From positions 124,001-188,000 of IMG/VR virus record IMGVR_UViG_3300020178_000002: 64,000 nt of DNA. The stretch is one strand, 5' to 3'. The position numbers and the translations under genes are program-made. Below the pieces are notes generated by a model. The model was not told the origin of the DNA. It did not search any database and saw only the letters and a program-made list of their open reading frames with translations. Positions 9,209 to 57,442 of this stretch are shown one piece after another (within the stretch, counting starts at the first letter, position 1; the number at the start of each line of letters is the position of its first letter).

Positions 9209-9217
9209 TATGTTTTC

Positions 9218-9793: not shown

Positions 9794-9967
9794 TGCTATA
9801 CCCTACCACTTTTTCAGTTGTCAATGCACCTTGTCTGTAAGACTCAGTGCAGGACACTGTTCTTTTTATAGCCTTAGTGCAGAATATAAATAAAGTACAA
9901 AATATATTAAACCCACAGAGAAAATGATCAAGGATTTTGATTTTTATTTTTGAACAGTTGCTAGGGC

Positions 9968-20116: not shown

Positions 20117-20454
20117 GTTTAACAGAGGTAGTTAATGGCAAGAGGGATTGGACAGATCTTAATTCAGTGGCAGGTAGGTATAAGGCTGCTCTTGAGTATG
20201 TTGATGCCACTAGTGATTTTAATGAAATACTTAAAGGAGCTTTGCTTGAGTGTGGTTTTAAGGAGGCAGAGAACAGGTATGTTTACAAACTTGGAGAGCC
20301 TATTAGTGAGGATCATGGTCATGCTCGAGTTATGGTTTATACTTATATGAGTTTGAAAACTTTTGGTTTTATTAAGGTGACGAGTAGAAATGGTATAGAA
20401 GAGGTTAATGATATATCAGAGTTATTTAATTTAATAAGGAGACATTGGAAATGA
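20113..20454 (+). CDS. YTExVNGKR...IRxxW family small protein
   Basis: ATG 20113 (ATGA overlap); LTEVVNGKRDW, ALLECGF, IRRHWK. Confidence 0.8.
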   Translation: MSLTEVVNGKRDWTDLNSVAGRYKAALEYVDATSDFNEILKGALLECGFKEAENRYVYKLGEPISEDHGHARVMVYTYMSLKTFGFIKVTSRNGIEEVNDISELFNLIRRHWK

Positions 20455-20828
20455 GTTTAACAGAGATTGTTAATGGTAAGAGAGATTGGACAAAAGAGGG
20501 TAAGCAGGTTATCCAGAACATTTTGAGTTGGGGCATGGACAAGGGCAACTATATGATGTTAGAGGACATTCTAACATTGGAGCTTGAGAAGACAGATTTC
20601 TCAAAAAAGGTATTGTGTGGAGATGGTAAGCGTAAGGCAATATGGGAGTCAGAGTGGGGTTGTTTGATTTACCTTGACTTGGACATGGAGACAGAGGTGG
20701 ATTCAACTTTCCATGTGAGCCTATTAAACTACAGGGGTTTTGATTCTACTAACATTCTGGATTTATGGGGTTTGATCAGACAAACTTGGGTTTGGAAGCA
20801 AAAGAACGATGCATGGGAAAACAGGTAA
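20451..20828 (+). CDS. YTExVNGKR...IRxxW family small protein
   Basis: ATG 20451 (ATGA overlap); LTEIVNGKRDW, LEKTDF, IRQTW. Confidence 0.8.
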   Translation: MSLTEIVNGKRDWTKEGKQVIQNILSWGMDKGNYMMLEDILTLELEKTDFSKKVLCGDGKRKAIWESEWGCLIYLDLDMETEVDSTFHVSLLNYRGFDSTNILDLWGLIRQTWVWKQKNDAWENR

Positions 20829-22212: not shown

Positions 22213-23049
22213 ATGAACAAAATACAGAGATTAGAAGCAAGAGTAGCTAGGCTTGAAAAAGAGTCTTTTATTTCGGCTCAAAAAGTATGGGATACAGCAA
22301 ACAGCATACTCCCTCAATTAAACAGGCTTAAGGGTGCTGCGAAAGAGCTGATTAGACTAGTGACAGGTGCTATACGCAGTGTTTGGGCAGAGTTGAATTT
22401 AATAGTTCGCAAGAAGAACAAGAAGAAGATACTTGGTTATTTGGAAGCTTCTTTTGAAGAAACTATAAAGAATGCTTTCCAGCCATTTGTCTCGGTGTCA
22501 GAGCCACCAGAGCTTGTGGCATTCTTGCCAGGCAATCTATTAGGTTCTACTTTTAGGTTCAAGAATAGGAAGTATCAGCTTAAAGAGTTATTAAGGCATG
22601 ATGCTGTGACAGGTCAAGGTGCTTACAATGCATATAATGAGTGGGTCACAGAGTATGGGTTATACTTGGACTATATGATGGATAAGTACCCAAGACCAGA
22701 CAGCAAAGTGGGCAAGAAGGTTGTTTATCAGATGATGGAGAACCTGAAAATAGGGAGACTTAGCAAACTTGCTTGGAAGTTTTTTAACATTTGGATAAAG
22801 GTAAGTTCCCAGATTGGTTTAGTGGTTGGTTTAGCGACAGCTTTATCTGCACTTTCTTTAGCTGTGGGTGTGAGAGGGGCAGTGAAAACATTTACTACTC
22901 TCCTTAATAATAAGATAGACAAGGAGATAGGTAAGACAGACTTAGCTAGTAATCCTTTGTTTGACCCTAACAAGACAGCCTCTCAAAGGAAGCTTTCATC
23001 TTTAGCTTTAGTGACCTTAGTGTTAGAGGACATTCACTATTCTTATTAG
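22213..23049 (+). CDS. Leader-tagged protein, distant member of the 27.8-32.7 kb hydrophobic paralog family
   Basis: Leader MNKIQRLEARVARLEKES; AYNEWVTEY matches AYxSWxxDY; hydrophobic stretch; KTAS before a short C-terminal tail. Confidence 0.75.
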   Translation: MNKIQRLEARVARLEKESFISAQKVWDTANSILPQLNRLKGAAKELIRLVTGAIRSVWAELNLIVRKKNKKKILGYLEASFEETIKNAFQPFVSVSEPPELVAFLPGNLLGSTFRFKNRKYQLKELLRHDAVTGQGAYNAYNEWVTEYGLYLDYMMDKYPRPDSKVGKKVVYQMMENLKIGRLSKLAWKFFNIWIKVSSQIGLVVGLATALSALSLAVGVRGAVKTFTTLLNNKIDKEIGKTDLASNPLFDPNKTASQRKLSSLALVTLVLEDIHYSY

Positions 23050-25986: not shown

Positions 25987-26799
25987 ATGAAAAGAACAAT
26001 AAGAGAACTTGAATCTAGGATTGCTAGACTCGAGAAACATTCATCAAAGAAAACTGCTATGAAGATAATTCACAGAGAGTTGATAGAATACCTGAAAAAG
26101 AAAAATCTTAAGAATGTGGGTAAGAGTGAGCCACTAGAATATGGTGGGCTATCGAGAAAAATAGGATTTGAATTTACGCTTATCCTTAACGACAATGAAT
26201 ACGAGGAGATGACTAAGTTCTTCAATAAGAATAAAAAATATAATAATGAGATAGTCATCAACGATGATGCTGTTGACGACATTATTGAACACCATTTAGA
26301 TGAAGACGAATACTTTGCACCTAGTAATGCTAGATACTCAGGGGGTAGTCCTTTTTGCATTCTTTCCCTATATAAAAATGGGTTGTTTACTCTTACAGTC
26401 GAAATGACTGTTCATAAGAAAAAAACTCCAAAGATTCCTACACCCCTTCAAAAGATTAACTTAGGGATAGGGAAAACTGTTTTTGATATCAAGAAATTGA
26501 CAACAGACTTGTGGATGCTTTTAAAAGACCAAATTGCATTCAAGCTAGAATCAATGGGTAGGGAAGAAGAAGAGCTAGAAGACCTTGCAAATCAGTATAT
26601 GATGAAAGTCCGTTTAGTTATGGATGCTGATGGGTTCTATTTTTTAAGGGTTAAGTCAGGAAGAAATCACTATATTCTTGACATGGAAGACACAGAAAAA
26701 CATGAGATTACAAACTCCAGAGGAAGATACACACAGAAAGCTCTAGAAAGACACCTAGACTTAAACTATGACGACTACACAAGATGGAAAGTAAAATGA
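25987..26799 (+). CDS. Leader-tagged hypothetical protein
   Basis: MKRTIRELESRIARLEKHSSKKTA leader; AGGAG SD. Confidence 0.8.
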   Translation: MKRTIRELESRIARLEKHSSKKTAMKIIHRELIEYLKKKNLKNVGKSEPLEYGGLSRKIGFEFTLILNDNEYEEMTKFFNKNKKYNNEIVINDDAVDDIIEHHLDEDEYFAPSNARYSGGSPFCILSLYKNGLFTLTVEMTVHKKKTPKIPTPLQKINLGIGKTVFDIKKLTTDLWMLLKDQIAFKLESMGREEEELEDLANQYMMKVRLVMDADGFYFLRVKSGRNHYILDMEDTEKHEITNSRGRYTQKALERHLDLNYDDYTRWKVK

Positions 26800-27230
26800 A
26801 AAGAACAGCACATGAAATAATTAGAAGTCTTGAACTTAGAGTAGCTAGACTTGAGAAGCAATCATCACATACAACATATAAGTTAAGTCCAGTTAGACCT
26901 GGACTTAAGAAGTACTTAGAAAATAAACTTAAGAGCATCCTTAGCGAAAGTGGCTATGGTGAAGATTCTTTTGAGGGGGTTGACAGAGTATTTCTTCAGT
27001 GGGATTTAGGAAATAGCTGGGGTGCAGATAACTACTTTGCAATTGGAGTAGACTCAGGTGCAGATACCTTTAGACTTATTTTGGATGATCATAAACCCAG
27101 TGACTTTGGAGATATAGATCCTTATGATGGAGATCCCAGAGGGCCTATTGATTGGACTCCTAAAAAAGTAAACCAAACTAAGCTAATGGATGCACTAGAA
27201 GAATACGATAATGATCTTTGGGAGATCTGA
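26796..27230 (+). CDS. Leader-tagged hypothetical protein
   Basis: Start moved to ATG 26796 (ATGA overlap); MKRTAHEIIRSLELRVARLEKQSS. Confidence 0.8.
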   Translation: MKRTAHEIIRSLELRVARLEKQSSHTTYKLSPVRPGLKKYLENKLKSILSESGYGEDSFEGVDRVFLQWDLGNSWGADNYFAIGVDSGADTFRLILDDHKPSDFGDIDPYDGDPRGPIDWTPKKVNQTKLMDALEEYDNDLWEI

Positions 27231-27790: not shown

Positions 27791-27846
27791 TATTCCATTT
27801 ATATCACCCTTAGCTTGTAAAAAGTGTAATCAGCGAGGGTTATATA

Positions 27847-28947
27847 ATGAATAAAGTATCTGCACAGCAAATCAGATCTCTTGAGGTCAGAATAGCTAGG
27901 CTTGAAAAAGAAGCTGGCTTTCAAGAGTTTATGGAAAGTGTCTCTAGTACATTTAAAAGCATAGTTAACATTCCTAAAAACATGGTGATTAGGATAATAA
28001 ATGCTTTTAAAGAAATTTTTACAACTGTAGAACTGTCATTAGAAGACGAAGAAAAAACAATTGAAAATGCACTTGGCTTTTTATTGGGTTCTCGCATCTT
28101 TAGAGCAATGGCTGGAGTCATAACAACAACAGATGATTTGCCTACGATTGTTAAATTCAATAGGAAGCAGCCTTTAAAGTCTACATTCACGGGTGGGCTT
28201 GCAGGAAAGGCTAAGGTTCAATTAAAGAACCTTATTAAGCGTTATAATGAAACAAACCAGACAAGAATGAAGTCTGCCTATCTTTCATGGTATTCAGATT
28301 TCAAGCACATCCTAAACCCAAAAATTAAAGAAGTTGAGGGTGTTGAATTTGCACTTCGAGAAATCAAGAAGGTCTCAAAGTTAGCATATAGGTTCTTGTC
28401 TTCAATCATCTCTGTATTAGGTGGTGTTGTTGCTATTAAAGGGACAGTGATCTCAACTCTGCTATTTATACTAGGTAGGATCTTTTTGCAGAAGTATGGT
28501 TTTCCAGTAGGAAGACCTAGTGAATGGACTCAAAATGAAGTTGTTTTTTCAAAGGTCACTGTTGAACCCGTAAATGCTACTATACATAGGAATGTAATAG
28601 ACGTTACCAGAGATAGATATAGTGATTATAAGAAACTTTCTCCTATACAAAAGCAGATTTTTGTTGAAAAAATACATGCTAAGGTAGAACAACACCCAAT
28701 GAAAAATTGGCAACCAGATTCAGCAGCTAACCTTCAAGATGTTAAGGATTGGATTAGATGGAAGCCTATTCAGTTTACCACAGCAATCTTGACACCTATT
28801 TTAGCACTCATTGAAACAATTATGTACAAGTGGGTGATTAAGACAGACGAATATGATGAAATGGTAAAAGAGCTAGAATCAAGAAATAAGAAAGCTTCTC
28901 AATACCCAACACTCTCTTATTTAACTCAGATTTTAGAAGGCAGGTGA
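27847..28947 (+). CDS. Leader-tagged hydrophobic paralog 1
   Basis: MNKVSAQQIRSLEVRIARLEKEAG; STFTGG; two hydrophobic segments; KKASQYP tail. Confidence 0.85.
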   Translation: MNKVSAQQIRSLEVRIARLEKEAGFQEFMESVSSTFKSIVNIPKNMVIRIINAFKEIFTTVELSLEDEEKTIENALGFLLGSRIFRAMAGVITTTDDLPTIVKFNRKQPLKSTFTGGLAGKAKVQLKNLIKRYNETNQTRMKSAYLSWYSDFKHILNPKIKEVEGVEFALREIKKVSKLAYRFLSSIISVLGGVVAIKGTVISTLLFILGRIFLQKYGFPVGRPSEWTQNEVVFSKVTVEPVNATIHRNVIDVTRDRYSDYKKLSPIQKQIFVEKIHAKVEQHPMKNWQPDSAANLQDVKDWIRWKPIQFTTAILTPILALIETIMYKWVIKTDEYDEMVKELESRNKKASQYPTLSYLTQILEGR

Positions 28948-28950
28948 GAC

Positions 28951-30051
28951 ATGAATAAGGTATCAGCACAACAAATTAGATCTCTTGAGCTTAGGATAGC
29001 TAGGCTTGAAAAAGAGGCTGGCTTTATAGATGATATGGTAGGTGTCTTTAAAAAGACACTCAACATACCTAAGAATATGTTCTTAAAGATACTTTATGCC
29101 TTCAAAGAAGTTTATGATGATGTTGTTGTATGGAACACAGAATCAGAATCTAAGGCTATGGATTCATTAGGTGCATTATTGGGCATAAGAATATTTAGAT
29201 CTTTAGCTGGTGTTATAACTACAAGTGAGGGTTTACCTAAAATTGTCAAGTTCAACTACTCTGACCCTTTAAGCTCAACCTTCACAGGTGGACTTGCAAT
29301 GAAGTCTAATATCCCTCTTAAGAAGCTTATCAATATGTATGAGGGTGAGAACCAGACCAGAATGAAGAGAGCTTACACTTCATGGTATGCAGACTATAAA
29401 GAAATCATAAACCCTTCTGTCTCTGATAGAGAAGCGATTGATATTTTCTTAGATCTTTGTAAAAGAGGTGGGAAGTGGCTCTATCGCTTAATGACTGCCC
29501 TTATAGGTTTGGTTGGTATAGCGACTCTTAAGTCCACAGTCATATTCAACATCATTATTATGGTTGTACAGAGATATGTGCAGATAGGGATGTTTGATTT
29601 TCGAAATATGGATAAGAGAATTCTGGACTTCCAAGAAACAACAGTAAAGTATATAGACATAAAATCTGTTAAGTATCTTGAAGCAGAGGGTGTTATTGAA
29701 AACACTCACAAATTCATATCTGATGTTCTGGTTGGTGGGAGAGGGTATGTTCCTCGAAAAGAAGTAAAGGAATTTACTCTCGCTATTGTTGAAAAGCCCT
29801 TGCAGAAATACCAACCTATTGATTTTGTGTCTTGGAAAAAAGTTAGAGAGTACATGACACAAAACTACACTACCTTTATTGGTGTTTTCCTAACAGGATT
29901 CTTAGCTCTACTTGAGAAAGCACTTTATAAATGGGTCTTTAAAACAGAAGACTATGAAAAGATGAAAGCTGAAAGTGATGCAATGGGCAAGACAGCTTCT
30001 AAATACCCTGCAATTGCTTATATGGCTAGAAAGCTAGAAAGCTATTTATGA
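28951..30051 (+). CDS. Leader-tagged hydrophobic paralog 2
   Basis: Same leader; STFTGG; KTASKYP tail. Confidence 0.85.
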   Translation: MNKVSAQQIRSLELRIARLEKEAGFIDDMVGVFKKTLNIPKNMFLKILYAFKEVYDDVVVWNTESESKAMDSLGALLGIRIFRSLAGVITTSEGLPKIVKFNYSDPLSSTFTGGLAMKSNIPLKKLINMYEGENQTRMKRAYTSWYADYKEIINPSVSDREAIDIFLDLCKRGGKWLYRLMTALIGLVGIATLKSTVIFNIIIMVVQRYVQIGMFDFRNMDKRILDFQETTVKYIDIKSVKYLEAEGVIENTHKFISDVLVGGRGYVPRKEVKEFTLAIVEKPLQKYQPIDFVSWKKVREYMTQNYTTFIGVFLTGFLALLEKALYKWVFKTEDYEKMKAESDAMGKTASKYPAIAYMARKLESYL

Positions 30052-30632
30052 TATACTCGCTTCAATGTACCTACTCAAATGGCATAAGAATAAACTCTTT
30101 AAATATATCACTTGCTAATGGACAGTCTTTCGATTGCCCAAAGCAAACATATGATACTAATAAAGAAATCCAAGCTCTGGTGTCCTCTGGTATGTTGAAG
30201 CTAAAAGTAAAAGAACACAAGTCTGGCCTTAGAGCGAACTCTAATAAACGAGTTTTACGAAGCAACCCGACTAATGAGAGAGTTGTAGAGAGAGTTGTAG
30301 AGAGAGTTGTTGAATCCCCAATAGACATGGATGCAATCACTAGGAATGTAGTTGAGCAAATAGGTGCTGTACTATCTCCTGAGATATTGGCTCAAGCAAT
30401 TGCAGCACAACTCCCTACTGTCCAAGCTAATTACCCACAGAAAAATGAGGGTAATAGTTCTTTTATGTCTTCTAGTGAAGACAATCTAATGTTTATCCCC
30501 TCTACTATTGTAGATAGAAATACTGTTGCTTCTAAATCCTCTGCCTCTGAAAGCATATCGGAAGACTCTGATGGTCTTGCTGATGCTATGGCTGCTTTAA
30601 AAGCAATGAAAAAGAAGAAAGGTCAAACCTAA
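30048..30632 (+). CDS. Hypothetical protein with ERVV x3 repeat
   Basis: 194 aa, overlapping both neighbours; 12-bp coding repeat GAGAGAGTTGTA. Confidence 0.75.
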   Translation: MIYSLQCTYSNGIRINSLNISLANGQSFDCPKQTYDTNKEIQALVSSGMLKLKVKEHKSGLRANSNKRVLRSNPTNERVVERVVERVVESPIDMDAITRNVVEQIGAVLSPEILAQAIAAQLPTVQANYPQKNEGNSSFMSSSEDNLMFIPSTIVDRNTVASKSSASESISEDSDGLADAMAALKAMKKKKGQT

Positions 30633-31564
30633 TGAATAAAGTATCTGCACAGCAAATCAGATCTCTTGAAATGAGAATTGCCAGACTCGAAAGAGAGGCT
30701 GGTCTTAAAGAAATCTTTGATGACATCTCTGGATTTGTTAAAGGTGTTGTTAACATTCCTAAAAACTTCATCAAGAAAATCATCAATGTTTTCAAAGATG
30801 TTGGAAACAACCTAACTGTCCTTCTTTCAAAACAAGAAGATAGGATTGTTAGAGCCCTTAAATCTGCATTGGGAATCCGAGTAGCTGCGACTCTTGAAGG
30901 CTTTGTTATAGATACTAGAGATCTTCCTATCATTGTAGACTTTAATCTTATGAATCCTATTAAGTCTACTTTCACAGGTGGCAATGCAGGATCTTCAAAA
31001 GTATCTTTGGACAAGTTGGCATCTCTCTATGATGGAGAAGAAGCTAGAAGAATTAAGTCAGCTTTCCTTTCATGGAAATCAGACTACCTTCCTTCTTTAA
31101 ATGCATTACAAGGAAAAGATGATGTTGGAGTTATTAAGGGCTTTCTAAAACTGATACAAAGGTCATCTAAACTGCTTTACAGATTCTTGAAGATTGCTCT
31201 AAGCATATTCAGCATTGCCCAGCTTATTGCAGCACCTTGGGGATCTTGGGTTTTAGGTTTAGCTATGGTCTTCATAGGGAATCATAATATGTTGCCTATA
31301 TCAGCCGACTATACTCTTCTAACAGATAAGAGTCTAGCTAATATTATGGATGCCAAAGACTTCTTACCTCGTAATGAAGTTCCATTGTTGAAATCTTTTG
31401 GTCCTGCTATTATCACTACTGTTCTTAAGATTCTTGAAAAAGCATTCTATCGCTATGGTGTTAATGTTGATGCCTTTGACGAGGAATCTATGGGTAGAAC
31501 AGCTTCTCAATTCCCAAGAGTTGCTTCTGTAACTAGAAGACTCGAACACTACGCTTACGCTTAA
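30632..31564 (+). CDS. Leader-tagged hydrophobic paralog 3
   Basis: Same leader; STFTGG; RTASQFPRVAS tail. Confidence 0.85.
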   Translation: MNKVSAQQIRSLEMRIARLEREAGLKEIFDDISGFVKGVVNIPKNFIKKIINVFKDVGNNLTVLLSKQEDRIVRALKSALGIRVAATLEGFVIDTRDLPIIVDFNLMNPIKSTFTGGNAGSSKVSLDKLASLYDGEEARRIKSAFLSWKSDYLPSLNALQGKDDVGVIKGFLKLIQRSSKLLYRFLKIALSIFSIAQLIAAPWGSWVLGLAMVFIGNHNMLPISADYTLLTDKSLANIMDAKDFLPRNEVPLLKSFGPAIITTVLKILEKAFYRYGVNVDAFDEESMGRTASQFPRVASVTRRLEHYAYA

Positions 31565-31615
31565 TATCTTATTTATCATTAGCTTCCTGTGAAAAAAACA
31601 CAGGGGGCTGATGAT

Positions 31616-31747
31616 ATGACAAGATACCAGATGAAAAGATTAGAGATGAGGATTTCCAGAAAACTCGAAAGGAAGTCCAAACTTCAACTTCAGCGTATCT
31701 ATCAGAGATTAGCTTCTTTAGAAAAAGAGGTTAAATCCAATGAATAA
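31616..31747 (+). CDS. 43-aa peptide made of two leader-like motifs (not in the ORF track)
   Basis: MTRYQMKRLEMRISRKLERKSKLQLQRIYQRLASLEKEVKSNE; AGGGGG SD; own TA-N5-TTTAT motif. Confidence 0.65.
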   Translation: MTRYQMKRLEMRISRKLERKSKLQLQRIYQRLASLEKEVKSNE

Positions 31748-32669
31748 AGTATCTGCACAGCAAATCAGATCTCTTGAAATGAGAATAGCTAGACTTGAAA
31801 GAGAAGCTAGCTTTCAAGATGTTTTGGATGACATCAGTGGTTTTGTTAAAGGTGTTGTTAATATCCCTAAGAACTTTATTAAAAACATCATCAATGTTTT
31901 GAAGGATGTAGGTAACAACCTTAAAGCAACTTTTGCTGAACAGCGTGAAGTTATTTGTGAAGCCCTAGAGTCTGCATTGGGAATCCGAGTAGCTGCTACT
32001 CTACAAAACTTTATTGTAGATACCAGAGACATGCCTGTTATCGTTGAGCTCAATGTAATGAACCCAATCAAGTCGATATTCACAGGTGGTAAAGCTGGTT
32101 CTTCAAAGTATGCTCTTGATAAGCTGGCATCTCTTTATGACCGTGAAAGGTCTAAAAGAATCAAGTCTGCATACCTCTCTTGGAAGTCAGACTACTCTTC
32201 TCAAATAGATATTCTTCAAGGAAAATTTGATGAGTCTAACTCTGTTAAAAGATTAATGAAGTTTCTTCAAAGAAGCTCTAAGGTTGCTTATAGATTTTTC
32301 AAAGTTCTTTTCAGCATAGTCTCTATGACAGAGGTTATTGCAGCACCTTGGGGCTCTTGGATTATTGACCTAGCAACAATTACAGTAGGGTCACTTGATC
32401 TAATACCATTTTTACCAAAAGAGTCATGGACTCTTAGTAAAGTTGAAAGTATCACTGGTTTATCTTTCACTACCAATACCCTGAGTAAAAGTGTGGTCAA
32501 GACAATCCCTGCTACAATAGTCACCTCTGTTCTTAAGCTTCTTGAAAAAGCATTCTATCGCTATGGTGTTAATGTTGACGCTTTTGACGAGGAATCTATG
32601 GGTAGAACAGCTTCTCAATTCCCAAGAGTTGCTTCTATAACTAGAAGACTTGAAAACTATATCCTTTAG
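31740..32669 (+). CDS. Leader-tagged hydrophobic paralog 4
   Basis: Same leader; close paralog of 30632..31564 with a near-identical 3' end. Confidence 0.85.
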   Translation: MNKVSAQQIRSLEMRIARLEREASFQDVLDDISGFVKGVVNIPKNFIKNIINVLKDVGNNLKATFAEQREVICEALESALGIRVAATLQNFIVDTRDMPVIVELNVMNPIKSIFTGGKAGSSKYALDKLASLYDRERSKRIKSAYLSWKSDYSSQIDILQGKFDESNSVKRLMKFLQRSSKVAYRFFKVLFSIVSMTEVIAAPWGSWIIDLATITVGSLDLIPFLPKESWTLSKVESITGLSFTTNTLSKSVVKTIPATIVTSVLKLLEKAFYRYGVNVDAFDEESMGRTASQFPRVASITRRLENYIL

Positions 32670-32683
32670 AAAGGCTCGAAAGA

Positions 32684-33091
32684 ATGAATAAAGTATCTGC
32701 ACAGCAAATCAGATCTCTTGAAATGAGAATAGCTAGACTCGAAAGAGAGGCTGGTCTTATAGACCATTTCTATAAATCTCCATACAAAGAAAAACTAAGC
32801 CCTGAAGATATAATAAAAGGCTTTATTAAAGTTTTTAATCGTGCTTGTAGACATGGAAGTGTTATGTCTATCTACTCAGACCCATATGAAAATGATTTCA
32901 TCCTTACCTTGAGACTTAACATCGGGATTGTAAAAATAAAAGTTTCTATAGATGGGGAATTGATAGAGGTCTATAAAAATGATGGTGCTGTATACACAAG
33001 GCTTATGGCATCTTTTGAATACAAAGATATTAAAAAGGGAATGGTCAAGGTTGTTAAAGCCCTTGAAGCTAAATCTATTTACTATGTATAA
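32684..33091 (+). CDS. Leader-tagged hypothetical protein with unrelated body
   Basis: Identical MNKVSAQQIRSLEMRIARLEREAG leader, then no visible similarity to paralogs 1-4. Confidence 0.8.
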   Translation: MNKVSAQQIRSLEMRIARLEREAGLIDHFYKSPYKEKLSPEDIIKGFIKVFNRACRHGSVMSIYSDPYENDFILTLRLNIGIVKIKVSIDGELIEVYKNDGAVYTRLMASFEYKDIKKGMVKVVKALEAKSIYYV

Positions 33092-33151: not shown

Positions 33152-34144
33152 ATGAGTAAAGGTGTAGGATTAGATATTGGAACTATGAACCTTGTTTCAT
33201 CAAGAATGAATAAGAAAGAAGTTTCAATCAGAAGAATGAGAGACTTGTTTATTGACCTGCCTGCTTCTGCAAAGAAAATGCTTAAGTTAGGTTCGGTTTC
33301 ATATATTGAGTCTGACGAGCATTTATTGGTTCTTGGCGATGAAGCTATGGAAGTTGCAAATATGTTCGGCAGAGAGGGTCGTAGACCCCTTAAAGCAGGT
33401 CTTGTCTCTCCAGACGAGATTGACTCCCTCACAGTTCTTGGTCACATGGTTAAAGATGTGCTTGGAGAGCCTTCACATGAGGGTGAGCATTGCTACTTCT
33501 CTATCCCAGCAGCACCTGTTGATGTTCAAATGGATGTTGTTTACCACAAGGGAGTATTTACTCGCATTGTTCAAGAATGTGGATATACCCCTCACCCAGC
33601 AAATGAAGCTATGGCTATTGTATTTGCAGAGACAGCTAAAGAGGGCTTCTCAGGCATTGGCATTAGTTTTGGTTCAGGTATGACCAACATTGCTCTTGCA
33701 ATTAACACCATTGAGGGTCTCAGCTTCTCAGTTGCTAGAGGTGGGGATTGGATTGACCAAGGTGCTGCAAGATCAGTTGGTGGTACAGCCTCTAAGATGT
33801 GTGCTGTCAAAGAGAAAGGCATTGACCTTAATGCACCTAAGAATAGAGAAGAAGAAGCAATCTCCTTTTACTATAAGGCTTTGATTGAACATGCTCTTGA
33901 TAACATTGCTCAACAGTTTGTAATGAAGGGTGGACACCTTACTCTCAACAAGCCTATTCCAATTGTAGTAGGTGGTGGAACAAGTCTAGCTGGTGGGTTC
34001 ATGGATTTCTTTAGAGAGGTCTTTGAAACTAAGCGTAAGCGTTTCCCTATCGAGATCTCTGAGGTACGTCATGCTTCTGACCCATTCCATGCAGTTAGCA
34101 AGGGTATGTTAGTTCTTGCCCAACAAGAGTATGACGAGGATTGA
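33152..34144 (+). CDS. Actin-fold (MreB/FtsA/ParM superfamily) ATPase
   Basis: Phosphate-1 GLDIGTMN, connect NEAMA, phosphate-2 GISFGSGMTNI, adenosine VVGGGTSL; AAGGAG SD. Confidence 0.85.
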   Translation: MSKGVGLDIGTMNLVSSRMNKKEVSIRRMRDLFIDLPASAKKMLKLGSVSYIESDEHLLVLGDEAMEVANMFGREGRRPLKAGLVSPDEIDSLTVLGHMVKDVLGEPSHEGEHCYFSIPAAPVDVQMDVVYHKGVFTRIVQECGYTPHPANEAMAIVFAETAKEGFSGIGISFGSGMTNIALAINTIEGLSFSVARGGDWIDQGAARSVGGTASKMCAVKEKGIDLNAPKNREEEAISFYYKALIEHALDNIAQQFVMKGGHLTLNKPIPIVVGGGTSLAGGFMDFFREVFETKRKRFPIEISEVRHASDPFHAVSKGMLVLAQQEYDED

Positions 34145-34229: not shown

Positions 34230-34523
34230 TTAGATAAGTTCAATGCCTTCAGAATCATATATATGATGACCCATTCTCTCGGAGAGAAGATGAAGAAGTA
34301 CCTTATCTGCTGGTAATGTTATAGTTTCAGAGTCACCATTTGAAAAATGGACTTTTCGGTTTCTTGAGTCAAACTCTATGAAACCGATATTACTTCCATC
34401 ATGGGAATCTTTTTCAACATGTCTTTGAAGTAAGTCAAAGTTGATCTTTACCGCAGCTTCTTTTTCGAGTCTAGCGATTCTCATTTCTAGTTCAGAAATA
34501 ATTTTTTGAGCTGATTTGTTCAT
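34230..34523 (-). CDS. Leader-tagged small hypothetical protein
   Basis: MNKSAQKIISELEMRIARLEKEAA; AAGGAG SD; TA-N5-TTTAT at 34562-34575 on the minus strand. Confidence 0.8.
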   Translation of the reverse strand: MNKSAQKIISELEMRIARLEKEAAVKINFDLLQRHVEKDSHDGSNIGFIEFDSRNRKVHFSNGDSETITLPADKVLLHLLSERMGHHIYDSEGIELI

Positions 34524-35583: not shown

Positions 35584-36393
35584 TTAGATGTAAGGAACAG
35601 ATTTTGGTCTCTTGTCTACAATGCGATATTCGTTACCGAATTTATCTTTAACATAGAGACTTTTTAAGTCACTAGAAACTCTAAGCTTTCTCTTGTATTT
35701 CTTCATAGTTTCTACATTAATGAGTTCTACACTTTGATTCCTTTTGTAGTACTTATTAATCATGTAGACATTTGGGTGACTATCGCTTACAAGGAAAGCT
35801 CCTATGATGCCAATGCTTGTGTATTTACTATCTTTGAATCCCTCAAGCTGCTCAGGTGTAACATTTTTATTCTTATTTGCACGAACACCACTCATGTCAG
35901 TATTCATAAATATAGCATCTTTAAAACTATTATTAATAATAGTAGATCTTTCTAGGCTTGCCTCTCGAAAAGAGACTCCATTCAAATTATTATGCATAAA
36001 ACTTGAGTTGTCTAGTGAAGCAATGTTGAAATATGCCCCTGTAAGATTACTTTCGTCAAAGGTAGACCTCTGAAGGTCACAGCCCGAGAACTCTGCATAT
36101 ATAGCTTTACATTTGAAAAGATGAACATTACCTTTGCTTAATTGTAACTGTGTAGTTAGCATTGTGCAATTTATAAATTTGGTATCTTTAAAACTACATC
36201 GCCCTAAGTTTGCACCACTAAGGATACAATTTTTAAAAGTAGTGCCATGAAGTTTTGTCTCTGAAAGATTTGCACTTGTGAAATCCACACCTGTGAATGT
36301 CTTATTAGAGAGATCTATTTCTTCAAGACTTGCGTGTTGTAAGTTCTTATTTCCAGCCATTAGTTGGTCTACAGAAAATTGATGTGCTGACAT
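35584..36393 (-). CDS. Pentapeptide-repeat protein
   Basis: A[DN][LF]xx periodicity (ASLEE IDLSN...VDFTS ANLSE...ANLGR...SNLTG AYFNI ASLDN). Confidence 0.9.
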   Translation of the reverse strand: MSAHQFSVDQLMAGNKNLQHASLEEIDLSNKTFTGVDFTSANLSETKLHGTTFKNCILSGANLGRCSFKDTKFINCTMLTTQLQLSKGNVHLFKCKAIYAEFSGCDLQRSTFDESNLTGAYFNIASLDNSSFMHNNLNGVSFREASLERSTIINNSFKDAIFMNTDMSGVRANKNKNVTPEQLEGFKDSKYTSIGIIGAFLVSDSHPNVYMINKYYKRNQSVELINVETMKKYKRKLRVSSDLKSLYVKDKFGNEYRIVDKRPKSVPYI

Positions 36394-38047: not shown

Positions 38048-39163
38048 TTAGCCTTCCCACTCATCAAATTCCATGATGTCAACTTCAAGTTTTTCTATGG
38101 GTGTAAATTTTAGTTTAATCTTACCGAGAATCTTCTCAAGCTCATTTTGTGTATTTGCTCTGACTCTAGCTCTATTTGGTTTTAAGAACTCAACAGTGAT
38201 TCTATCTCCTGTACCCCATTCAAGAGTTCTGTCTCTACCAGCCATTTCTGTGACTCTAAAGAAAGCAAAGCCTGGTTTATCCTCATCATTTATAACAAGA
38301 GGATCACCATATTGGGTATCTAAGTAAACTTTGTAGCCCATATCTTTTAGTTTGTTATAAACATCTTCTGCTTTAGGTACATTTGTCTCATCATAGATAG
38401 CAAGTCCAAGACCTAGAACTTCGCTTATAAAGTATGCCAGATCCCAATTATCACTTGAGAACTTCATCTTTGGGTGGAAGATGTTTGTGATCACAGGTGT
38501 TGTTCCAACATGCTTTAGCTTCCTATCAATACCTAGATTTTCAAAGTTCCAATCTCGGTCATTCTTATTTTCATGGAATCCTTCAATTAGCTCTAACTTA
38601 TCTTCTAAAGTCTTCCCAGATGAGTTAATGGCTTTAGAAACTTCTCGAGTGTCTCGATCTCTCATGTCTTTAGAGATATCAACAACGACCTCTTTCAAAT
38701 CTTCCATGTCATTAACATCAACTTCACTCTCAAGCATTTCCTTGATTCTGTTTTTAACATTTGATGAAAGGGGGGTGTTTGCAGCCTTCATGTTCTCAAG
38801 TCTTGCAATCCTATTGCTTAACTCTTGAATCTTACTTTGTGAAGATAGACTTGAAACTCTCAGTTTGAGGTATTTCTTAAGAGTCATACCAGGCTCTTCT
38901 TGCCTAGAAGATAAAGAAAGTGGGAATTGATATGAGGGCAGGAAGCCTGACTTGAACTGTCCTGTATATAAACCACCTTCACCATCTATGTGTAAGACTA
39001 CTCTTTTAGTATATCCACTTTCTGAAGAAACTTCCAAATCCTGTGTGAGGTAAGGGTGGTCTTTATCTACACTTGGTCTACCCACAGGTTTTACAAAGTA
39101 CCCTGATGTTTCAAGGTGGTTGTTTAATGACATGATTGCAGGTACAAGATATTTCGTGATCAT
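38048..39163 (-). CDS. Two-part protein with an internal leader-like motif
   Basis: Internal SKIQELSNRIARLENMKAA at about residue 110-130. Confidence 0.75.
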   Translation of the reverse strand: MITKYLVPAIMSLNNHLETSGYFVKPVGRPSVDKDHPYLTQDLEVSSESGYTKRVVLHIDGEGGLYTGQFKSGFLPSYQFPLSLSSRQEEPGMTLKKYLKLRVSSLSSQSKIQELSNRIARLENMKAANTPLSSNVKNRIKEMLESEVDVNDMEDLKEVVVDISKDMRDRDTREVSKAINSSGKTLEDKLELIEGFHENKNDRDWNFENLGIDRKLKHVGTTPVITNIFHPKMKFSSDNWDLAYFISEVLGLGLAIYDETNVPKAEDVYNKLKDMGYKVYLDTQYGDPLVINDEDKPGFAFFRVTEMAGRDRTLEWGTGDRITVEFLKPNRARVRANTQNELEKILGKIKLKFTPIEKLEVDIMEFDEWEG

Positions 39164-52743: not shown

Positions 52744-52744
52744 G

Positions 52745-54133
52745 ATGGCATTTTTAAGGTACGCAAAAGCTAATGTAGTTCGCCCTCAAGTACACGGGCT
52801 AGATTGGGACAAAGTAAGAGTTGCTTCTGGTAATAGGCAACTAAACCAATCTTTAAAGAAAAAAGCTGAAGATATTCTAGGGGAGGCATTTACCCCAGAT
52901 AGATTTCTTTTAACACATGCTACTATCGTATGTTCTGTAGATTCTGTAACGCCTCCAAATACAAAAACAGGATCTATTAAAGAAGGTGGCTTTACTATAA
53001 ACAGAAAGTATTCTGATTACAGAATCTCAAAGGAGACTGACAAGTATATTAATAATAACCTAGACTCATGGTCTAGAGGTGTTATTAAAAGATCTTATCA
53101 GACTTTCATAGGTTCTCATAACTTTGTAGAGCATGTTCAAGTAGAAGAGCTTTCTAAGGGCAAAATCATTGATGCTGTTTTAAGAGACATTGGTGAAAGC
53201 CTCTATGTAGATATTCTAGTAGCTACTGATAGGAAACACAAAGACCTTGTAGAGCAGATTCTCTCTGGCCAGATGAACTCTATGTCTATGGGTTGTTCAG
53301 TCGATTTTACTATTTGTACTAAATGTGGTCACGTTGCAGCAGACGAAACTGAAATGTGTTCACATGTGAAGTATGAAAAAGGAAATACATTCTTTGATGA
53401 CCAAGGCAATAAGCACAGAGTTGCTGAGTTATGTGGTCACGAAGATGTGGGTGAGACTGCTGGTGTTACTTTTATTGAGGCTTCTTGGGTTGCAACTCCT
53501 GCTTTTCCAGGTGCGGTTGCTAGAAATACCATTGAAATACCCTCTTCTGATAACCCCTCAGAAGTTCCTTCAAAATGGGTAGATAAATCTGCAAGCCTTT
53601 CTTTAACTTCTGCTTTTGGAATGGAAGAAGAAGAAGAATCTGAAGAAGGTGGAGATAAAGAACCAGCAGACGAGTCTCTCCTTAAGAAGCTAGATTCAGT
53701 ATATGAGCAAGCTATCATAGACAGATTCAAGAATAAGCTTGAAACTGAGATGAAGAAAGAGAAAGCTCAAGAGAAACTCTATCCTCCCACAAGTCAATCT
53801 TCTGTAGCCCAGAACGACACTGTGATTAAAGAAGGAAAGAAAGTCTCAACCAGAGAGTATACTAAAGCATTAGATATTTCTGTAAAGACAGCTTCTAATT
53901 TAGAAGAAGCACTCTTTAACATTGCTTTAGTAAACAATCACTTTGGTGTCAGCATCCCTTCTCACCTTTATAAGATAGCCAGTAAGCTAGGAAGCACTTC
54001 TAAATATGCATCTGTTCAAGATTATATTGAGAAAGCTGTAAGCCTACATGGTAAAGCATTATCGGAGAAAGATTCTTTCATCTTAATTCGGTTAGCAAAA
54101 ATAACATCCCTTAACAACTTCGGGCAGAAATAA
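52745..54133 (+). CDS. Prohead maturation protease (HK97/herpes assemblin-like) with Zn-binding insertion
   Basis: Start moved to ATG 52745 (AAGGAG SD); NFVEH, GKIIDA, SMSMGC, CTKCGH...CSH, FIEASWVATPAFPGA; upstream of scaffold and capsid genes. Confidence 0.8.
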   Translation: MAFLRYAKANVVRPQVHGLDWDKVRVASGNRQLNQSLKKKAEDILGEAFTPDRFLLTHATIVCSVDSVTPPNTKTGSIKEGGFTINRKYSDYRISKETDKYINNNLDSWSRGVIKRSYQTFIGSHNFVEHVQVEELSKGKIIDAVLRDIGESLYVDILVATDRKHKDLVEQILSGQMNSMSMGCSVDFTICTKCGHVAADETEMCSHVKYEKGNTFFDDQGNKHRVAELCGHEDVGETAGVTFIEASWVATPAFPGAVARNTIEIPSSDNPSEVPSKWVDKSASLSLTSAFGMEEEEESEEGGDKEPADESLLKKLDSVYEQAIIDRFKNKLETEMKKEKAQEKLYPPTSQSSVAQNDTVIKEGKKVSTREYTKALDISVKTASNLEEALFNIALVNNHFGVSIPSHLYKIASKLGSTSKYASVQDYIEKAVSLHGKALSEKDSFILIRLAKITSLNNFGQK

Positions 54134-54169
54134 AGTCTTGCCCTCTACGATATGAAAGGACTATGCCTT

Positions 54170-55819
54170 ATGTCTAGGTATTCCCGTTCTAAGTCTCGCA
54201 TGACTTCAGCTCGAAAAAGTCGTGTTCGCAAAGCAACCTCATCAGTTCCAGGTTATGATAATCTAGGTTGGGATCACTTCGGTCACCCTGCTTCAGCAGA
54301 ACAACCAGATCTTGAAGAATATGGTATTGATTCTGATTTCGGTGAAGGTGTTCGCAAAGGTCCTTATGAGGACAGCCCTGCACCTGCTTCTTACTCATGG
54401 GAGCCTGATCACCCTGCACACTCAAAGAAAGCTCTAAAGAGTGCTATGGAGCGTAAAGCTGCTAAGTGCATTCGTATTGCTGAGTCTCGTCTTGGTAAGT
54501 TTGCTTCTCAACGTGAGATCGAAGATCTTGCACTTCGCTTCATGGATCTTCCTAACAGTGTAATCAACTCAAGAGTTGCTAGCATTGAAGACCCAATGGC
54601 TGAAGAAATTGATGCTATGCATGATATGTATGCAGAAGACATTGATCCAATGGCTGAAGAAGTCGAAGGTATGATGTACGCAGAAGACCCTATGGCTGAA
54701 GAGGTTGAAGGCATGATGTATGCTGAAGACCCTATGGCTGACCTTATGTATGACGACATGGATGACGACATGGGTATGATGGCAGACCTTATGGATGACT
54801 CTATGGATGATTCTATGGATATGATGGCAGACCTTATGGATGACTCTATGGATGATTCTATGGATATGATGGCAGACCTTATGGATGATTCTATTGATGA
54901 CGACATGGATATGATGGCTGACCTTATGGATGATGACATGGGTGATTCTATTGATGACGACATGGGTATGATGGCTGAAAGTCTTTTCGCTATGGAGCAT
55001 GACGCTATGGAGCATGACGCTATGGAGCATGGCATGTTTGCAAGCATTGATGAGCCTGTAGCAGACGACATGGGCGACATCATGGCAGACTTGTTTGGAG
55101 AAGAAACTGAGAGTGAAGCTGATATCCTAGCTGACGAAGTTGCTAGTCTTAAAGCTGCAAATGCCAGACTAGCTCGCAAAGTAAGAAATCTTAGCAGAAC
55201 TGTAAACGCTTCTAAAGCAGAGGAAGTAAAAGCAGAAGAGACTGAGGCAGAAGAAACTGAAAGCACCGAAGAGAAAGTAGCTCGTATCGAGAGACTTGCA
55301 AACGCTTTAGCTGACTACATGGCTGAGATGGAGCGTACTGCTGCTGAAGAGGAAGAAGCTAAAGAGGAAGAAGCTCCTAAAGAAGAAGCTAAAGAAGAAG
55401 CTCCTAAAGAGGAAGCTAAAGAAGAAGCTCCTGCTGAGAAGAAAGCTTATAACTCAATGGCAGATATTCTTGCAGAGCTTGAAGTAGAGAGTGAAGAAGT
55501 TGATCCTATGGCAGAAGAGCTTGAGCCTGTAGCTGAAGACCCAATGGGACTAGACAGTGTGGCTGACATGCAAATTGATGCTCGTCTTGCTTCTATCTTC
55601 ACTGCTGGTGAAGAAGGTGAAGTTGCAGAAGAAACTGAAGCAGAAGAAACTGAAGCAGAAGAAACTGATGCTGGTAAGAAAGCTTCATATCGCCCAAGCA
55701 CTCAAGCTCGTCAAGCATCTGTAAAGACTCTTGGAAACATCAGTCGTGAAGCTTCAAGCTCTGATGAACTCAGCAAGCTTTGGGAATCTGCTCCAGACGT
55801 AAGCAAATTCTTCGGTTAA
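54170..55819 (+). CDS. Capsid scaffold-like acidic protein with Met/Asp repeats
   Basis: Start moved to ATG 54170; highly acidic, low complexity, coiled coil; between protease and capsid genes. Confidence 0.75.
   Translation: MSRYSRSKSRMTSARKSRVRKATSSVPGYDNLGWDHFGHPASAEQPDLEEYGIDSDFGEGVRKGPYEDSPAPASYSWEPDHPAHSKKALKSAMERKAAKCIRIAESRLGKFASQREIEDLALRFMDLPNSVINSRVASIEDPMAEEIDAMHDMYAEDIDPMAEEVEGMMYAEDPMAEEVEGMMYAEDPMADLMYDDMDDDMGMMADLMDDSMDDSMDMMADLMDDSMDDSMDMMADLMDDSIDDDMDMMADLMDDDMGDSIDDDMGMMAESLFAMEHDAMEHDAMEHGMFASIDEPVADDMGDIMADLFGEETESEADILADEVASLKAANARLARKVRNLSRTVNASKAEEVKAEETEAEETESTEEKVARIERLANALADYMAEMERTAAEEEEAKEEEAPKEEAKEEAPKEEAKEEAPAEKKAYNSMADILAELEVESEEVDPMAEELEPVAEDPMGLDSVADMQIDARLASIFTAGEEGEVAEETEAEETEAEETDAGKKASYRPSTQARQASVKTLGNISREASSSDELSKLWESAPDVSKFFG
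54590..55030 (+). repeat. Coding tandem repeats (EDPMAEEVEGMMYA; 45-bp MADLMDDSMDDSMDM; 15-bp AMEHD)
   Basis: Exact 45-bp units at 54779-54823 and 54824-54868, plus degenerate copies. Confidence 0.9.
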
Positions 55820-56563: not shown

Positions 56564-57442
56564 ATGAGTAATACAGTTGATAATTCAGTAAAACAAAAGA
56601 TCATTAGCGACTACATCAAGACCCCTCAAGGTCGTGCAAAGCTAGCTGCTTCAATGACTCAACCTCTTCGTCTTCGCCGTGACTATACAAGCGTTGGTCG
56701 TAAGACCTTCCTTGTTGAGCAACTTCCTGATGGTGCGTTGCCTATTTACGACAAAGACCCAGACGTAACAGCTTTCGTAGTTGGTGAAGAAGGCGAGAAC
56801 ATTCTTGCTATCACCAAGCCTCGTCGTGTTATCTTCCCTCTCTTTGAGATTGCTTCTAACCCTGAGATTCCTTTAACTCAGATCAAGGAAAGACGCTTCG
56901 ATCTTATCGAGAGAGCACAGGATCTTGCTAGAGCACAAATTCAGGCTGCTGAAGACGAGCGTGTATTCGCTATTCTTGACGCAGTTGCAGCTAATGGTTT
57001 CGACAGCGTTTCTGGTCAAACCAATGCTGACATTCCTGTTATCGCTCCTCTTAATGGTGCTGTTCTTGCTGACGCATACAGCCTAATTGAGAGACATGAC
57101 CTTAGAGTTGCCCGTGTATTTATGAATGCTAGAGACTATGCTGACATTCGTAAGTTCGGTCGTGACATTCTCGATATCGAGAGTCAAGCAGCCCTTCTCA
57201 AGACAGGTCTACAAGCAACTCTTTGGGGTGCTCAAATCATCACAAGTCGTCTTGTTCCTGTTGGTACAGTTTATGTTTGTTGTGAGCCAGAAATGTTCGG
57301 TCGTATCCCTGTTCGTACAGAGTTGACTGTTCTTTCTGCTGACGATCCAAAAGCTCGTACAATCGGCTTCTCTTGCTTCGAGAATCTAGGTATCGGTGCT
57401 TATAACCCTCGTGGTCTTGCTAGACTTACTGTTACTCGCTAA
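56564..57442 (+). CDS. Major capsid protein (HK97 fold)
   Basis: 292 aa; PLFEIASNPEI...RRFDLIERAQ...IQAAEDERVF, VFMNARDYADIRK, LWGAQIITSRLVPVG; strongly biased codons; terminator follows. Confidence 0.88.
   Translation: MSNTVDNSVKQKIISDYIKTPQGRAKLAASMTQPLRLRRDYTSVGRKTFLVEQLPDGALPIYDKDPDVTAFVVGEEGENILAITKPRRVIFPLFEIASNPEIPLTQIKERRFDLIERAQDLARAQIQAAEDERVFAILDAVAANGFDSVSGQTNADIPVIAPLNGAVLADAYSLIERHDLRVARVFMNARDYADIRKFGRDILDIESQAALLKTGLQATLWGAQIITSRLVPVGTVYVCCEPEMFGRIPVRTELTVLSADDPKARTIGFSCFENLGIGAYNPRGLARLTVTR

What the first reader, a model, noticed from the sequence alone, without database searches (positions are those of the whole stretch)
27847..32669. Doubly tagged paralog family with two hydrophobic segments and a hypervariable insert
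Seen: four tandem paralogs (plus the distant 22213 gene) share the leader, a core (NIPKN, LGxR, FTGG, A[YF]xSWxxD), a long hydrophobic segment, a region of very different sequence and length (longer by ~55 aa in the first two), a second hydrophobic helix and a [KR]xAS tail. Inference: head-packaged proteins that insert into the host membrane after ejection (DNA-entry conduit, exclusion or anti-defence), with a diversifying loop.
Basis: partly seen in the sequence, partly recalled or inferred. Interest (0 to 1): 0.65.

Follow-up and report, generated by a model that had tools for sequence, protein, structure and literature searches.

The report
Leader-tagged jumbo-phage head cargo family
A coastal-marine jumbo phage carries eight copies of a previously undescribed protein that wears the same short address tag at its front as about a dozen other phage proteins and a conserved clip-site motif near its end, most likely so that it is loaded into the virus head and trimmed there; this is a new variation on a packaging trick known from phage T4.

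Summary
Four tandem genes (27847-32669) plus 22213-23049 and three more copies elsewhere in the 312-kb phage genome form one family with no Pfam, PHROG or fold match. All share a 23-residue heptad leader that about 18 proteins of this phage carry, a helical core, a Gly/Ala-rich hydrophobic stretch, a variable region, an amphipathic helix and an invariant [KR]-x-A-S about 20 residues from the end. The leader also ends in K-x-[AS]-[GS]. [KR]xAS is twice as frequent as expected across the proteome, clusters in the acidic scaffold-like protein and behind the catalytic domain of the head protease, and sits in that place in the proteases of Tunturi_5 and phage G. My best reading is head-targeted cargo trimmed at both ends by the prohead protease. 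It resembles T4 internal proteins and Alt but uses a different tag and site. Nothing here shows virion presence or cleavage. Membrane insertion is doubtful, because the hydrophobic stretch is only marginally TM-like. The "diversifying loop" fails for copies A, B and D (dN/dS 0.02-0.19). Only copy C is variable between populations. I rate it a new variant of a known kind, of moderate interest.

The parts
27847..28947 (+). Paralog A (366 aa): leader aa 1-23 (27847-27915), helical core, hydrophobic stretch aa ~173-215 (28363-28491), long variable region aa ~216-305 (28492-28761), amphipathic helix, K-K-A-S at aa 348-351 (28888-28899), 15-aa tail ending in LE-GR
27797..27804 (+). Promoter-like ATTTATAT 50 nt before the start of A. 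It belongs to a motif class found 37-52 nt before about 35 starts, including head-cluster genes.
28951..30051 (+). Paralog B (366 aa), same plan as A; K-T-A-S at aa 347-350
30048..30632 (+). Intervening 194-aa ORF with no leader and low-complexity sequence. It overlaps the stop of B and the start of C and is conserved at this place in relatives (190-195 aa). Its role is unknown.
30632..31564 (+). Paralog C (310 aa): leader 30632-30700, hydrophobic stretch with a central A-P-W-G aa ~179-219 (31166-31288), short variable region aa ~220-253 (31289-31390), R-T-A-S aa 289-292 (31496-31507). It is the one copy whose variable region differs strongly between populations.
31565..31739 (+). C-D spacer: a terminator-like hairpin just after C and a 52-codon leader-like ORF (31589-31747) that may be a relic of duplication
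31740..32669 (+). Paralog D (309 aa). It is absent from one relative (L001) and lies before C in another (L005). Its leader ends in R-E-A-S.
22213..23049 (+). Distant paralog E (278 aa) with the strongest hydrophobic stretch of the window copies, no variable insert, and K-T-A-S 21 aa from the end
32684..33091 (+). 135-aa protein that carries the identical leader but is not a family member (soluble, no hydrophobic stretch)
25987..27230 (+). Two further leader-bearing, non-family proteins (270 aa and about 144-148 aa)
34230..34523 (-). 97-aa leader-bearing, non-family protein
52745..54133 (+). Head maturation protease (phrog_18299; its start is inferred from orthologues). It has four [KR]xAS after the catalytic domain, two of them conserved in position in relatives.
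54152..55819 (+). Acidic scaffold-like protein with six [KR]xAS, three of them in the last 50 aa. Its C-terminal K-K-A-S-Y-R-P resembles the family's tail.
56564..57442 (+). Major capsid protein (phrog_2522), 98-99% identical in relatives whose copies of the family are about 40% identical

Best explanation
The genes encode a phage-specific family of head-internal cargo proteins. Shown: every member starts with a 23-residue amphipathic heptad leader (hydrophobic residues at positions 9, 12, 16, 19 and 23) that about 18 otherwise unrelated proteins of this phage also carry, and every member ends with an invariant [KR]-x-A-S followed by a helix of about 20 residues. Inferred: the leader docks the precursor onto the scaffolding core of the prohead, in the way a T4-type capsid-targeting sequence does. 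The prohead protease then cuts at K-x-[AS]|[GS], both at the end of the leader and at the C-terminal [KR]-x-A|S. This releases a mature protein of about 250-320 residues (helical bundle, Gly/Ala-rich hydrophobic hairpin, amphipathic helix) inside the head. More speculative: the mature protein leaves the head with the DNA, and its buried, marginally hydrophobic hairpin lets it associate with the host membrane. The tandem array changes by duplication, loss and exchange at the repeated leader-coding and tail-coding ends, with copy C the fast-changing member.
For: Family and leader. All 41 cluster representatives found among 1.84 billion proteins align from residue ~22-32 onward, so all carry a leader, and distant members keep both the leader and the [KR]xAS tail. 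The same leader heads small unrelated ORFs on other 60-227 kb viral contigs. The constraint on the leader is mainly on the protein: synonymous differences exist (leader dS 0.35-0.73 between paralogs). Site motif: the leader ends in K/R-[EQH]-[AS]-[GSA] and the tail carries [KR]-x-A-S. [KR]xAS occurs 117 times against 60 expected outside the family, and the excess is specific to K/R, A and S at those positions. A leaderless relative gives an observed/expected ratio of 1.18. There are 6 copies in the scaffold-like protein (P 7e-5 at the proteome rate) and 5 in the protease, 4 of them after the catalytic domain. Several of these sit in conserved islands in orthologues that are only 42-74% identical. 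The same motif lies just after the protease domain in Tunturi_5 gp331 and phage G gp19, 4 times in the Tunturi_5 scaffold-like gp332 and 5 times in its annotated 'DNA ejection protein'. Context: the sheath, protease, scaffold and MCP genes are in the same window, and a promoter-like motif is shared with head genes. Precedent: T4 CTS propeptides on diverse internal proteins, and Alt processed at both termini (PMC9026906); paralogous cleaved ejection proteins in SPN3US (PMC10052503); many non-structural proteins reported in phage G particles (PMC12484599). The family evolves far faster than the capsid (about 40% against 98-99% identity).
Against: No proteomic, N-terminal or structural data exist for this phage or a close relative, so virion presence and cleavage are inference. 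[KR]xAS is short. It also occurs 6 times in a UvrD-like helicase and 9 times in an unknown 783-aa protein, and a profile of the whole tail finds no significant match outside the family (best E 0.46). The T4 rule L/I-x-E is not what the leader shows. Other cuts, for instance after the L-E of the leader and the final L-E of the tail, which is enriched in leader proteins, fit equally well. The hydrophobic stretch is too weak for a classical TM helix. No pore-former or known ejection-protein fold was found. The MCP-tail co-fold gave no verdict.
Confidence: 0.5

Rival explanations
1. The proteins are head-internal assembly components that stay in the head, such as a core or 'inner body' or DNA-organising proteins. 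They carry the same tags and undergo the same trimming, but they have no role in the host after ejection.
For: The same evidence as for head targeting applies. T4 IPIII and the phiKZ-type inner-body paralog families show that tagged, cleaved internal proteins can serve assembly. A, B, D and E are under strong purifying selection and are nearly identical between strains, which suits a structural role.
Against: There are eight divergent copies, copy number and order vary between strains, and the divergence is very fast relative to the capsid. These look more like host-facing cargo. Two relatives with a homologous capsid lack the family altogether: LR745208.1 by my own scan of its whole sequence, and Tunturi_5 only by a search that found no candidates and had no positive control.
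Confidence: 0.2
2. These are late proteins that never enter the virion. The leader is a coiled-coil oligomerisation or localisation tag for an intracellular structure, such as an assembly site, a membrane patch or the phage's actin-like filament, and [KR]xAS has another meaning such as a modification site.
For: The leader is a generic three-heptad coiled coil. A volactin-like actin homologue lies next to the array. [KR]xAS is also enriched in DNA enzymes. The motif has the basic-residue-at-minus-3 form of many Ser kinase sites (own knowledge).
Against: No protein kinase domain was found in the genome. The motif clusters exactly where phage proteases process themselves and their scaffolds, in three related lineages. 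The leader is followed by a conserved small-residue junction, which is typical of a removable propeptide.
Confidence: 0.15
3. These are integral membrane proteins of the infected cell, for example holin-like, superinfection-exclusion or anti-defence proteins, inserted co-translationally.
For: The proteins have a hydrophobic stretch plus an amphipathic helix. The nearest language-model neighbours include a TrbL-containing cluster and picornavirus 2B, but at scores (0.80-0.83) that shuffled proteins also reach.
Against: The best 19-mers have positive apparent insertion energies, and many members have none below +2.5 kcal/mol. There is no signal peptide. The N-terminus is a charged coiled coil that soluble small proteins also carry.
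Confidence: 0.1

Closest known systems
T4 internal proteins IPI/IPII/IPIII and Alt with their capsid targeting sequence (CTS)
   Same: A short conserved N-terminal propeptide is shared by otherwise unrelated proteins. It ends at a putative prohead-protease site. The genes are variable between related phages. Alt is processed at both termini (PMC9026906).
   Different: The leader here has 23 residues and a heptad pattern, against 10-19 residues in T4. There is no sequence similarity (PHROG 'internal head protein' E 0.21). The junction is K-x-A/S|G/S rather than L/I-x-E. The protease family is different (phrog_18299, phage G lineage). The mature proteins are larger and carry a hydrophobic hairpin. 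Nothing has been shown experimentally.
phiKZ/SPN3US ejection and inner-body paralog families cleaved by the prohead protease
   Same: These are jumbo phages with multi-copy paralog families of head-internal proteins that carry protease-removed propeptides (PMC10052503).
   Different: In SPN3US all substrate propeptides are N-terminal except that of the protease itself, and a different cleavage motif is used. There is no homology and the capsid lineage is different.
Herpesvirus assemblin and scaffold maturation site (consensus V/L-x-A|S; own knowledge)
   Same: An Ala-Ser scissile pair lies about 20-25 residues from the C-terminus of the scaffold, and a site follows the protease domain. The protease belongs to the wider prohead-protease world.
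   Different: P3 is basic here rather than hydrophobic. The similarity is by analogy only and no cleavage has been shown.
T7 gp14/15/16 and P22 gp7/16/20 ejection proteins
   Different: Those proteins have no shared leader. No fold or sequence similarity was found. This phage has a contractile tail.

Membership tests
T4-type CTS internal proteins | Conserved N-terminal propeptide shared by unrelated proteins of one phage | tested here: met
   About 18 ORFs genome-wide carry the leader, 8 of them family members
T4-type CTS internal proteins | Propeptide ends at the T4 gp21 consensus L/I-x-E | tested here: not met
   The leader has S-L-E and R-L-E (x-L-E) and ends in K-E-A-G/S
T4-type CTS internal proteins | Sequence homology to IPI/II/III or Alt | tested here: not met
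   No PHROG or Pfam hit; phrog_5750 scores E 0.21
T4-type CTS internal proteins | Present in the mature head and cleaved by the prohead protease | not testable with these tools
   No proteome is available; only the motif distribution bears on this
Integral membrane (TM helix) proteins | At least one segment of about 19-23 residues with favourable insertion energy | tested here: inconclusive
   Kyte-Doolittle peaks are 1.4-2.25, but the simplified apparent energy is +0.6 to above +2.5 kcal/mol in the window copies, and only 2 of 39 homologues fall below 0
Diversity-generated or positively selected hypervariable proteins | A reverse transcriptase/DGR, or dN/dS above 1 in the variable region | tested here: not met
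   No RVT_1 domain in the genome. dN/dS is 0.02-0.19 in A, B and D and 0.5-0.97 in C on few sites
Tape measure proteins | A significant profile match | tested here: not met
   Only E 0.16-0.41 matches to TMP PHROGs
Alpha-helical pore formers (ClyA/AhlC, colicin-like) | Fold similarity | tested here: not met
   ClyA and AhlC appear only at Foldseek E 0.6-1.2 with TM about 0.1. The best VIA Z is 5.6

The most novel reading that the evidence does not exclude
A clade of coastal-marine jumbo phages with an almost invariant capsid protein uses a two-ended address-and-release code to load a large and changeable cargo into the head. The code is an N-terminal heptad leader and a C-terminal [KR]-x-A|S tail, both read by the scaffold and the prohead protease. 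The cargo includes this family, pentapeptide DNA mimics and DNA enzymes. The eight-member family is the membrane-active part of that cargo and opens or guards the entry route after ejection.
Probability: 0.15. Interest if true: 0.75.

Novelty: new variant of a known kind. Interest (0 to 1): 0.55.

Why it matters
If the two tags work as proposed, they give a simple rule, readable from sequence, for predicting the packaged proteome of an uncultured group of jumbo phages. They would also be a portable tag for loading foreign proteins into large capsids, as the T4 CTS has been. The contrast between a frozen capsid (98-99% identity) and a fast-changing tagged cargo (about 40%) points to where these phages adapt to their hosts. 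The family itself has no known fold relative despite a confident model, so its structure and activity are open questions.

Tried and rejected
- Pfam and PHROG scans of all members gave nothing below E 0.002.
- blastn and tblastn against 50,697 GenBank phage records gave no match.
- The family profile and leader were absent from LR745208.1 by my own scan of its whole sequence. The genome search on LR745208.1 and Tunturi_5 found no candidates and had no positive control, so it says little about Tunturi_5.
- The AF2 model of copy A was poor (pLDDT 55). Its VIA search gave only generic helical bundles (Z below 8).
- The good model of copy C (pLDDT 79) found no relative: Foldseek PDB best E 0.3, VIA wide best Z 5.6, BFVD best E 0.15, ESM Atlas TM at most 0.30.
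- Atlas feature search gave only sub-threshold leads, TrbL and picornavirus 2B at 0.80-0.83.
- Complex prediction of the MCP with the C-terminal 49 residues of copy C gave no verdict (score 0.00). I do not count it either way.
- A profile of the tail alone found no significant hit outside the family. I therefore dropped the idea of a long shared C-terminal module and kept only the four-residue motif statistics.
- A DGR was rejected because the genome has no RT.
- A kinase-motif reading was weakened because no Pkinase domain was found.
- The search for related loci with the wide alignment failed for lack of a conserved stretch.
- The TTTATAG heptamer is not enriched genome-wide (98 against 105 expected). 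Only its position before starts is notable.
- The phage G multi-omics paper gives no cleavage sites.
Full report
WHERE WE ARE. The window is bases 124001-188000 of a single 312,136-bp contig with 38% GC. It is an IMG/VR virus record with direct terminal repeats, judged 100% complete. The window holds a 1603-aa tail sheath, a head maturation protease (phrog_18299), an acidic scaffold-like protein and a 292-aa major capsid protein (phrog_2522). Among cultured phages, the capsid protein's relatives are Tunturiibacter phage Tunturi_5 (47% identity) and Bacillus phage G (38%). Near-identical DNA occurs in salt-marsh, estuary, seawater and marine metagenomes. This is therefore a coastal-marine jumbo myophage of the phage G capsid lineage, and its host is unknown.

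THE OBSERVATION. It is correct. Four ORFs fill 27847-32669: A (366 aa), B (366 aa), C (310 aa) and D (309 aa). A 194-aa unrelated ORF lies between B and C, and a 175-bp spacer lies between C and D. Together with the 278-aa gene at 22213 they align end to end, with 27-40% identity to A and 63% between C and D. A profile built from them also finds three further members elsewhere in the genome, at 9039-9935, 90020-90868 and 91547-92425. The family therefore has eight paralogs.

The shared plan of a family member is as follows:
- a 23-residue leader;
- a stretch of about 40 residues rich in Gly, Ala, Ser, Thr and aliphatic residues;
- a region of very different length and sequence, about 90 aa in A and B, about 34 aa in C and D, and almost none in E;
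- an amphipathic helix;
- an acidic turn;
- an invariant [KR]-x-A-S;
- a final helix of about 17-22 residues that ends in L-E plus two to five residues.

HOW NEW THE FAMILY IS. Pfam and PHROGs give nothing, and GenBank phages give nothing. The word-index search found 14 metagenomic proteins. The exhaustive profile search of 1.84 billion representatives found only 41 clusters. All full-length hits align from their residue 22-32 onward, so all have a leader, and the sequences I read keep both a recognisable leader variant and the [KR]xAS tail. With a 39-sequence alignment AlphaFold2 gave a usable model of C (pLDDT 78.8, pTM 0.69). It has long helices, a tiny beta element at residues 100-115, and several shorter helices through the hydrophobic stretch. 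No library returned a convincing fold relative: Foldseek PDB best E 0.3, VIA-align best Z 5.6, BFVD best E 0.15, ESM Atlas TM at most 0.30. The model of A was poor.

THE LEADER IS A PROTEOME-WIDE TAG. A scan of all six frames of the genome finds the leader core (R-[IV]-A-[RK]-L-E) at the N-terminus of about 18 ORFs. Inside the window these are the five family genes plus 25987, 26784, 32684 and 34523(-). The latter four are small, soluble-looking proteins unrelated to the family. Hydrophobic residues sit at positions 9, 12, 16, 19 and 23, which is an a/d heptad pattern, and the model makes the leader a helix. Synonymous differences exist between the leader-coding segments (dS 0.35-0.73), so the constraint is mainly on the peptide. 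The lower dS at both gene ends than in the core (1.1-1.3) also suggests exchange between copies. The same leader heads small ORFs on other viral contigs of 60-227 kb. It is absent from LR745208.1, a 485-kb phage with an 89% identical capsid protein.

THE TAIL MOTIF AND A LIKELY PROTEASE SITE. The leader always ends in K/R-[EQH]-[AS] followed by G, S or A, and the tail carries [KR]-x-A-S. The following observations point to this motif as a processing site:
- In the whole proteome [KR]xAS occurs 132 times against 62 expected. Without the family it occurs 117 times against 60 expected. The excess is specific to K/R at the first position, A at the third and S at the fourth. In LR745208.1 the ratio is 1.18.
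- Outside the family the motif is over-represented 5-40 residues from C-termini (27 against 14.3 expected, P 8e-4).
- It clusters in the scaffold-like protein (6 copies, 3 of them in the last 50 residues; P 7e-5) and in the protease (5 copies, 4 behind the catalytic domain; P 3e-4).
- In two other phages the protease is 67-74% and the scaffold 42-50% identical to ours. There, several of these sites sit in conserved islands within otherwise variable acidic sequence.
- In Tunturi_5 the protease has K-V-A-S 23 residues from its end, the acidic gp332 has four copies, and the annotated 'DNA ejection protein' gp328 has five.
- Phage G protease gp19 has two copies, both behind its catalytic domain, and one of them reads L-E-K-V-A-S, much like the end of our leader.

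Prohead proteases typically process themselves and their scaffolds at just these places (PMC10052503; PMC9026906). Herpesvirus assemblin cuts at Ala|Ser (own knowledge). I therefore infer that K-x-A|S/G is the cleavage site of this protease lineage and that the family is trimmed at both ends.

This remains inference, for three reasons. The motif is short. It also abounds in a UvrD-like helicase and in an unknown 783-aa protein. A profile of the entire tail finds nothing significant outside the family. An alternative or additional site is the L-E found in the leader and close to the C-terminus of 11 of 20 leader proteins, against 106 of 924 other ORFs (seven of the eleven are family members, so they are not independent).

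THE HYDROPHOBIC SEGMENTS. Kyte-Doolittle peaks of 1.4-2.25 confirm a hydrophobic stretch. On a simplified biological scale (values recalled from Hessa et al. 2005) the best 19-mers of the window copies score +0.6 to above +2.5 kcal/mol. Only 2 of 39 homologues fall below zero. Nineteen clear membrane segments of the same phage score -4.4 to +0.4. In C and D the stretch is broken by a conserved A-P-W-G, and the model splits it into short helices. The picture is a marginally hydrophobic helical hairpin that could be buried in a soluble bundle. That would suit a protein that must travel in a capsid, and it leaves later membrane association possible but unproven. The second 'hydrophobic helix' is amphipathic.

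THE VARIABLE REGION. It is saturated between paralogs, but between orthologues it is not diversifying. Against two related phages (L001, L005) dN/dS in that region is 0.15-0.19 for A, 0.10-0.12 for B and 0.02 for D, and A, B and E are 96-100% identical between strains. The genome has no reverse transcriptase.

Copy C is the exception. Its dN/dS is 0.97 and 0.51 on few sites. In one marine population about 170 nt of exactly this region are replaced by 182 unalignable nt, while the flanks stay 88-97% identical.

The C/D end of the array is also structurally unstable. D is missing in L001, D precedes C in L005, and marine contigs lack D. Public contigs often break at the leader repeats. Compared with the capsid protein (98-99% identical in G001 and G002), the family has diverged to about 40%.

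EXPRESSION AND REGULATION. A promoter-like T(A/G)TTTATA(T/G) lies 37-52 nt before about 35 starts. These include A, E, 34523(-), three other leader genes, and the head-cluster genes 55922, 57629 and 59903. A, B, the 194-aa ORF and C abut or overlap, and a hairpin follows C, so A to C look like one late operon. Contigs from a salt-marsh metatranscriptome match parts of A, B and the 194-aa ORF perfectly, but DNA carry-over cannot be excluded.

VERDICT. The most likely explanation is head-targeted cargo with a removable N-terminal address tag and a C-terminal trimmed tail. In kind it resembles the T4 CTS proteins, with Alt as the doubly processed precedent, and the cleaved paralog families of phiKZ-like phages. 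It differs from them in tag, site, protease lineage and protein fold. I put head targeting and processing at about 0.5-0.6, post-ejection membrane activity at about 0.3, and a generally diversifying loop at under 0.1. The co-fold test of tail against capsid protein gave no verdict and is not used.

Noticed in passing
window 33152-34144 (+): A 330-aa actin homologue matches Pfam Volactin (PF25216) at E 5e-74 right beside the array. The gene is kept at this place in relatives.
   Followed up: partly
window 56564-57442; L097, L098; LR745208.1: The capsid protein is 98-99% identical in two other jumbo contigs (GC 43-45%) whose protease is 67-74% and scaffold 42-50% identical. It is 89% identical in a 485-kb phage of 55% GC. 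This is an unusually frozen capsid across very different genomes.
   Followed up: partly
whole genome G000: The tetrapeptide [KR]-x-A-S is about twice as frequent as composition predicts (117 against 60 outside the family) and is enriched near C-termini. One unknown 783-aa protein (G000 257191-259542, minus strand) has nine copies.
   Followed up: partly
window 19790-20828 (+): Three tandem small ORFs (108, 116 and 127 aa) share another conserved N-terminal stretch of about 15 residues (S-L-T-E-[VI]-V-N-G-K-R-D-W). This is a second, different paralog set with a common head.
   Followed up: no
about 35 gene starts, e.g. window 27797, 22170, 55842, 57591, 59852: A promoter-like T(A/G)TTTATA(T/G) lies 37-52 nt before start codons. 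TATTTATA occurs 14 times in upstream regions against 1.6 expected. It is shared by leader genes and head genes.
   Followed up: partly
window 31565-31747: The spacer after gene C holds a stem-loop (CCTGTG, seven A, CACAGG) and a 52-codon ORF with two degenerate leader-like repeats. It may be a duplication relic.
   Followed up: no
window 52592-54133: The longest ORF of the protease starts at a GTG inside the previous gene. Orthologues start at the Met 51 codons later (52745), which is the likelier start.
   Followed up: yes
window 38048-39163 (-) and G000 8355-9212 (-): Two ORFs carry the leader internally (residues ~106-128 and ~114). Either their real starts are downstream or the leader can be internal. 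The second ORF also has a clear TM segment and K-Q-A-S 12 residues from its end.
   Followed up: no
window 60900-62267, 35584-36393; G000 291060-291995, 305492-306769, 201998-205123: A eukaryotic-type topoisomerase IB-like protein, several pentapeptide-repeat proteins and a UvrD-like helicase carry [KR]xAS close to their C-termini. Phage G particles are reported to contain many DNA-metabolism proteins (PMC12484599).
   Followed up: partly
window 185-9208 (-): A 3007-aa ORF has no PHROG match.
   Followed up: no
window 27868-27915, 30640-30711, 31755-31808: Contigs of public assemblies end or switch to other leader genes at the leader-coding repeats, so the leader acts as a dispersed DNA repeat that fragments assemblies.
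   Followed up: partly
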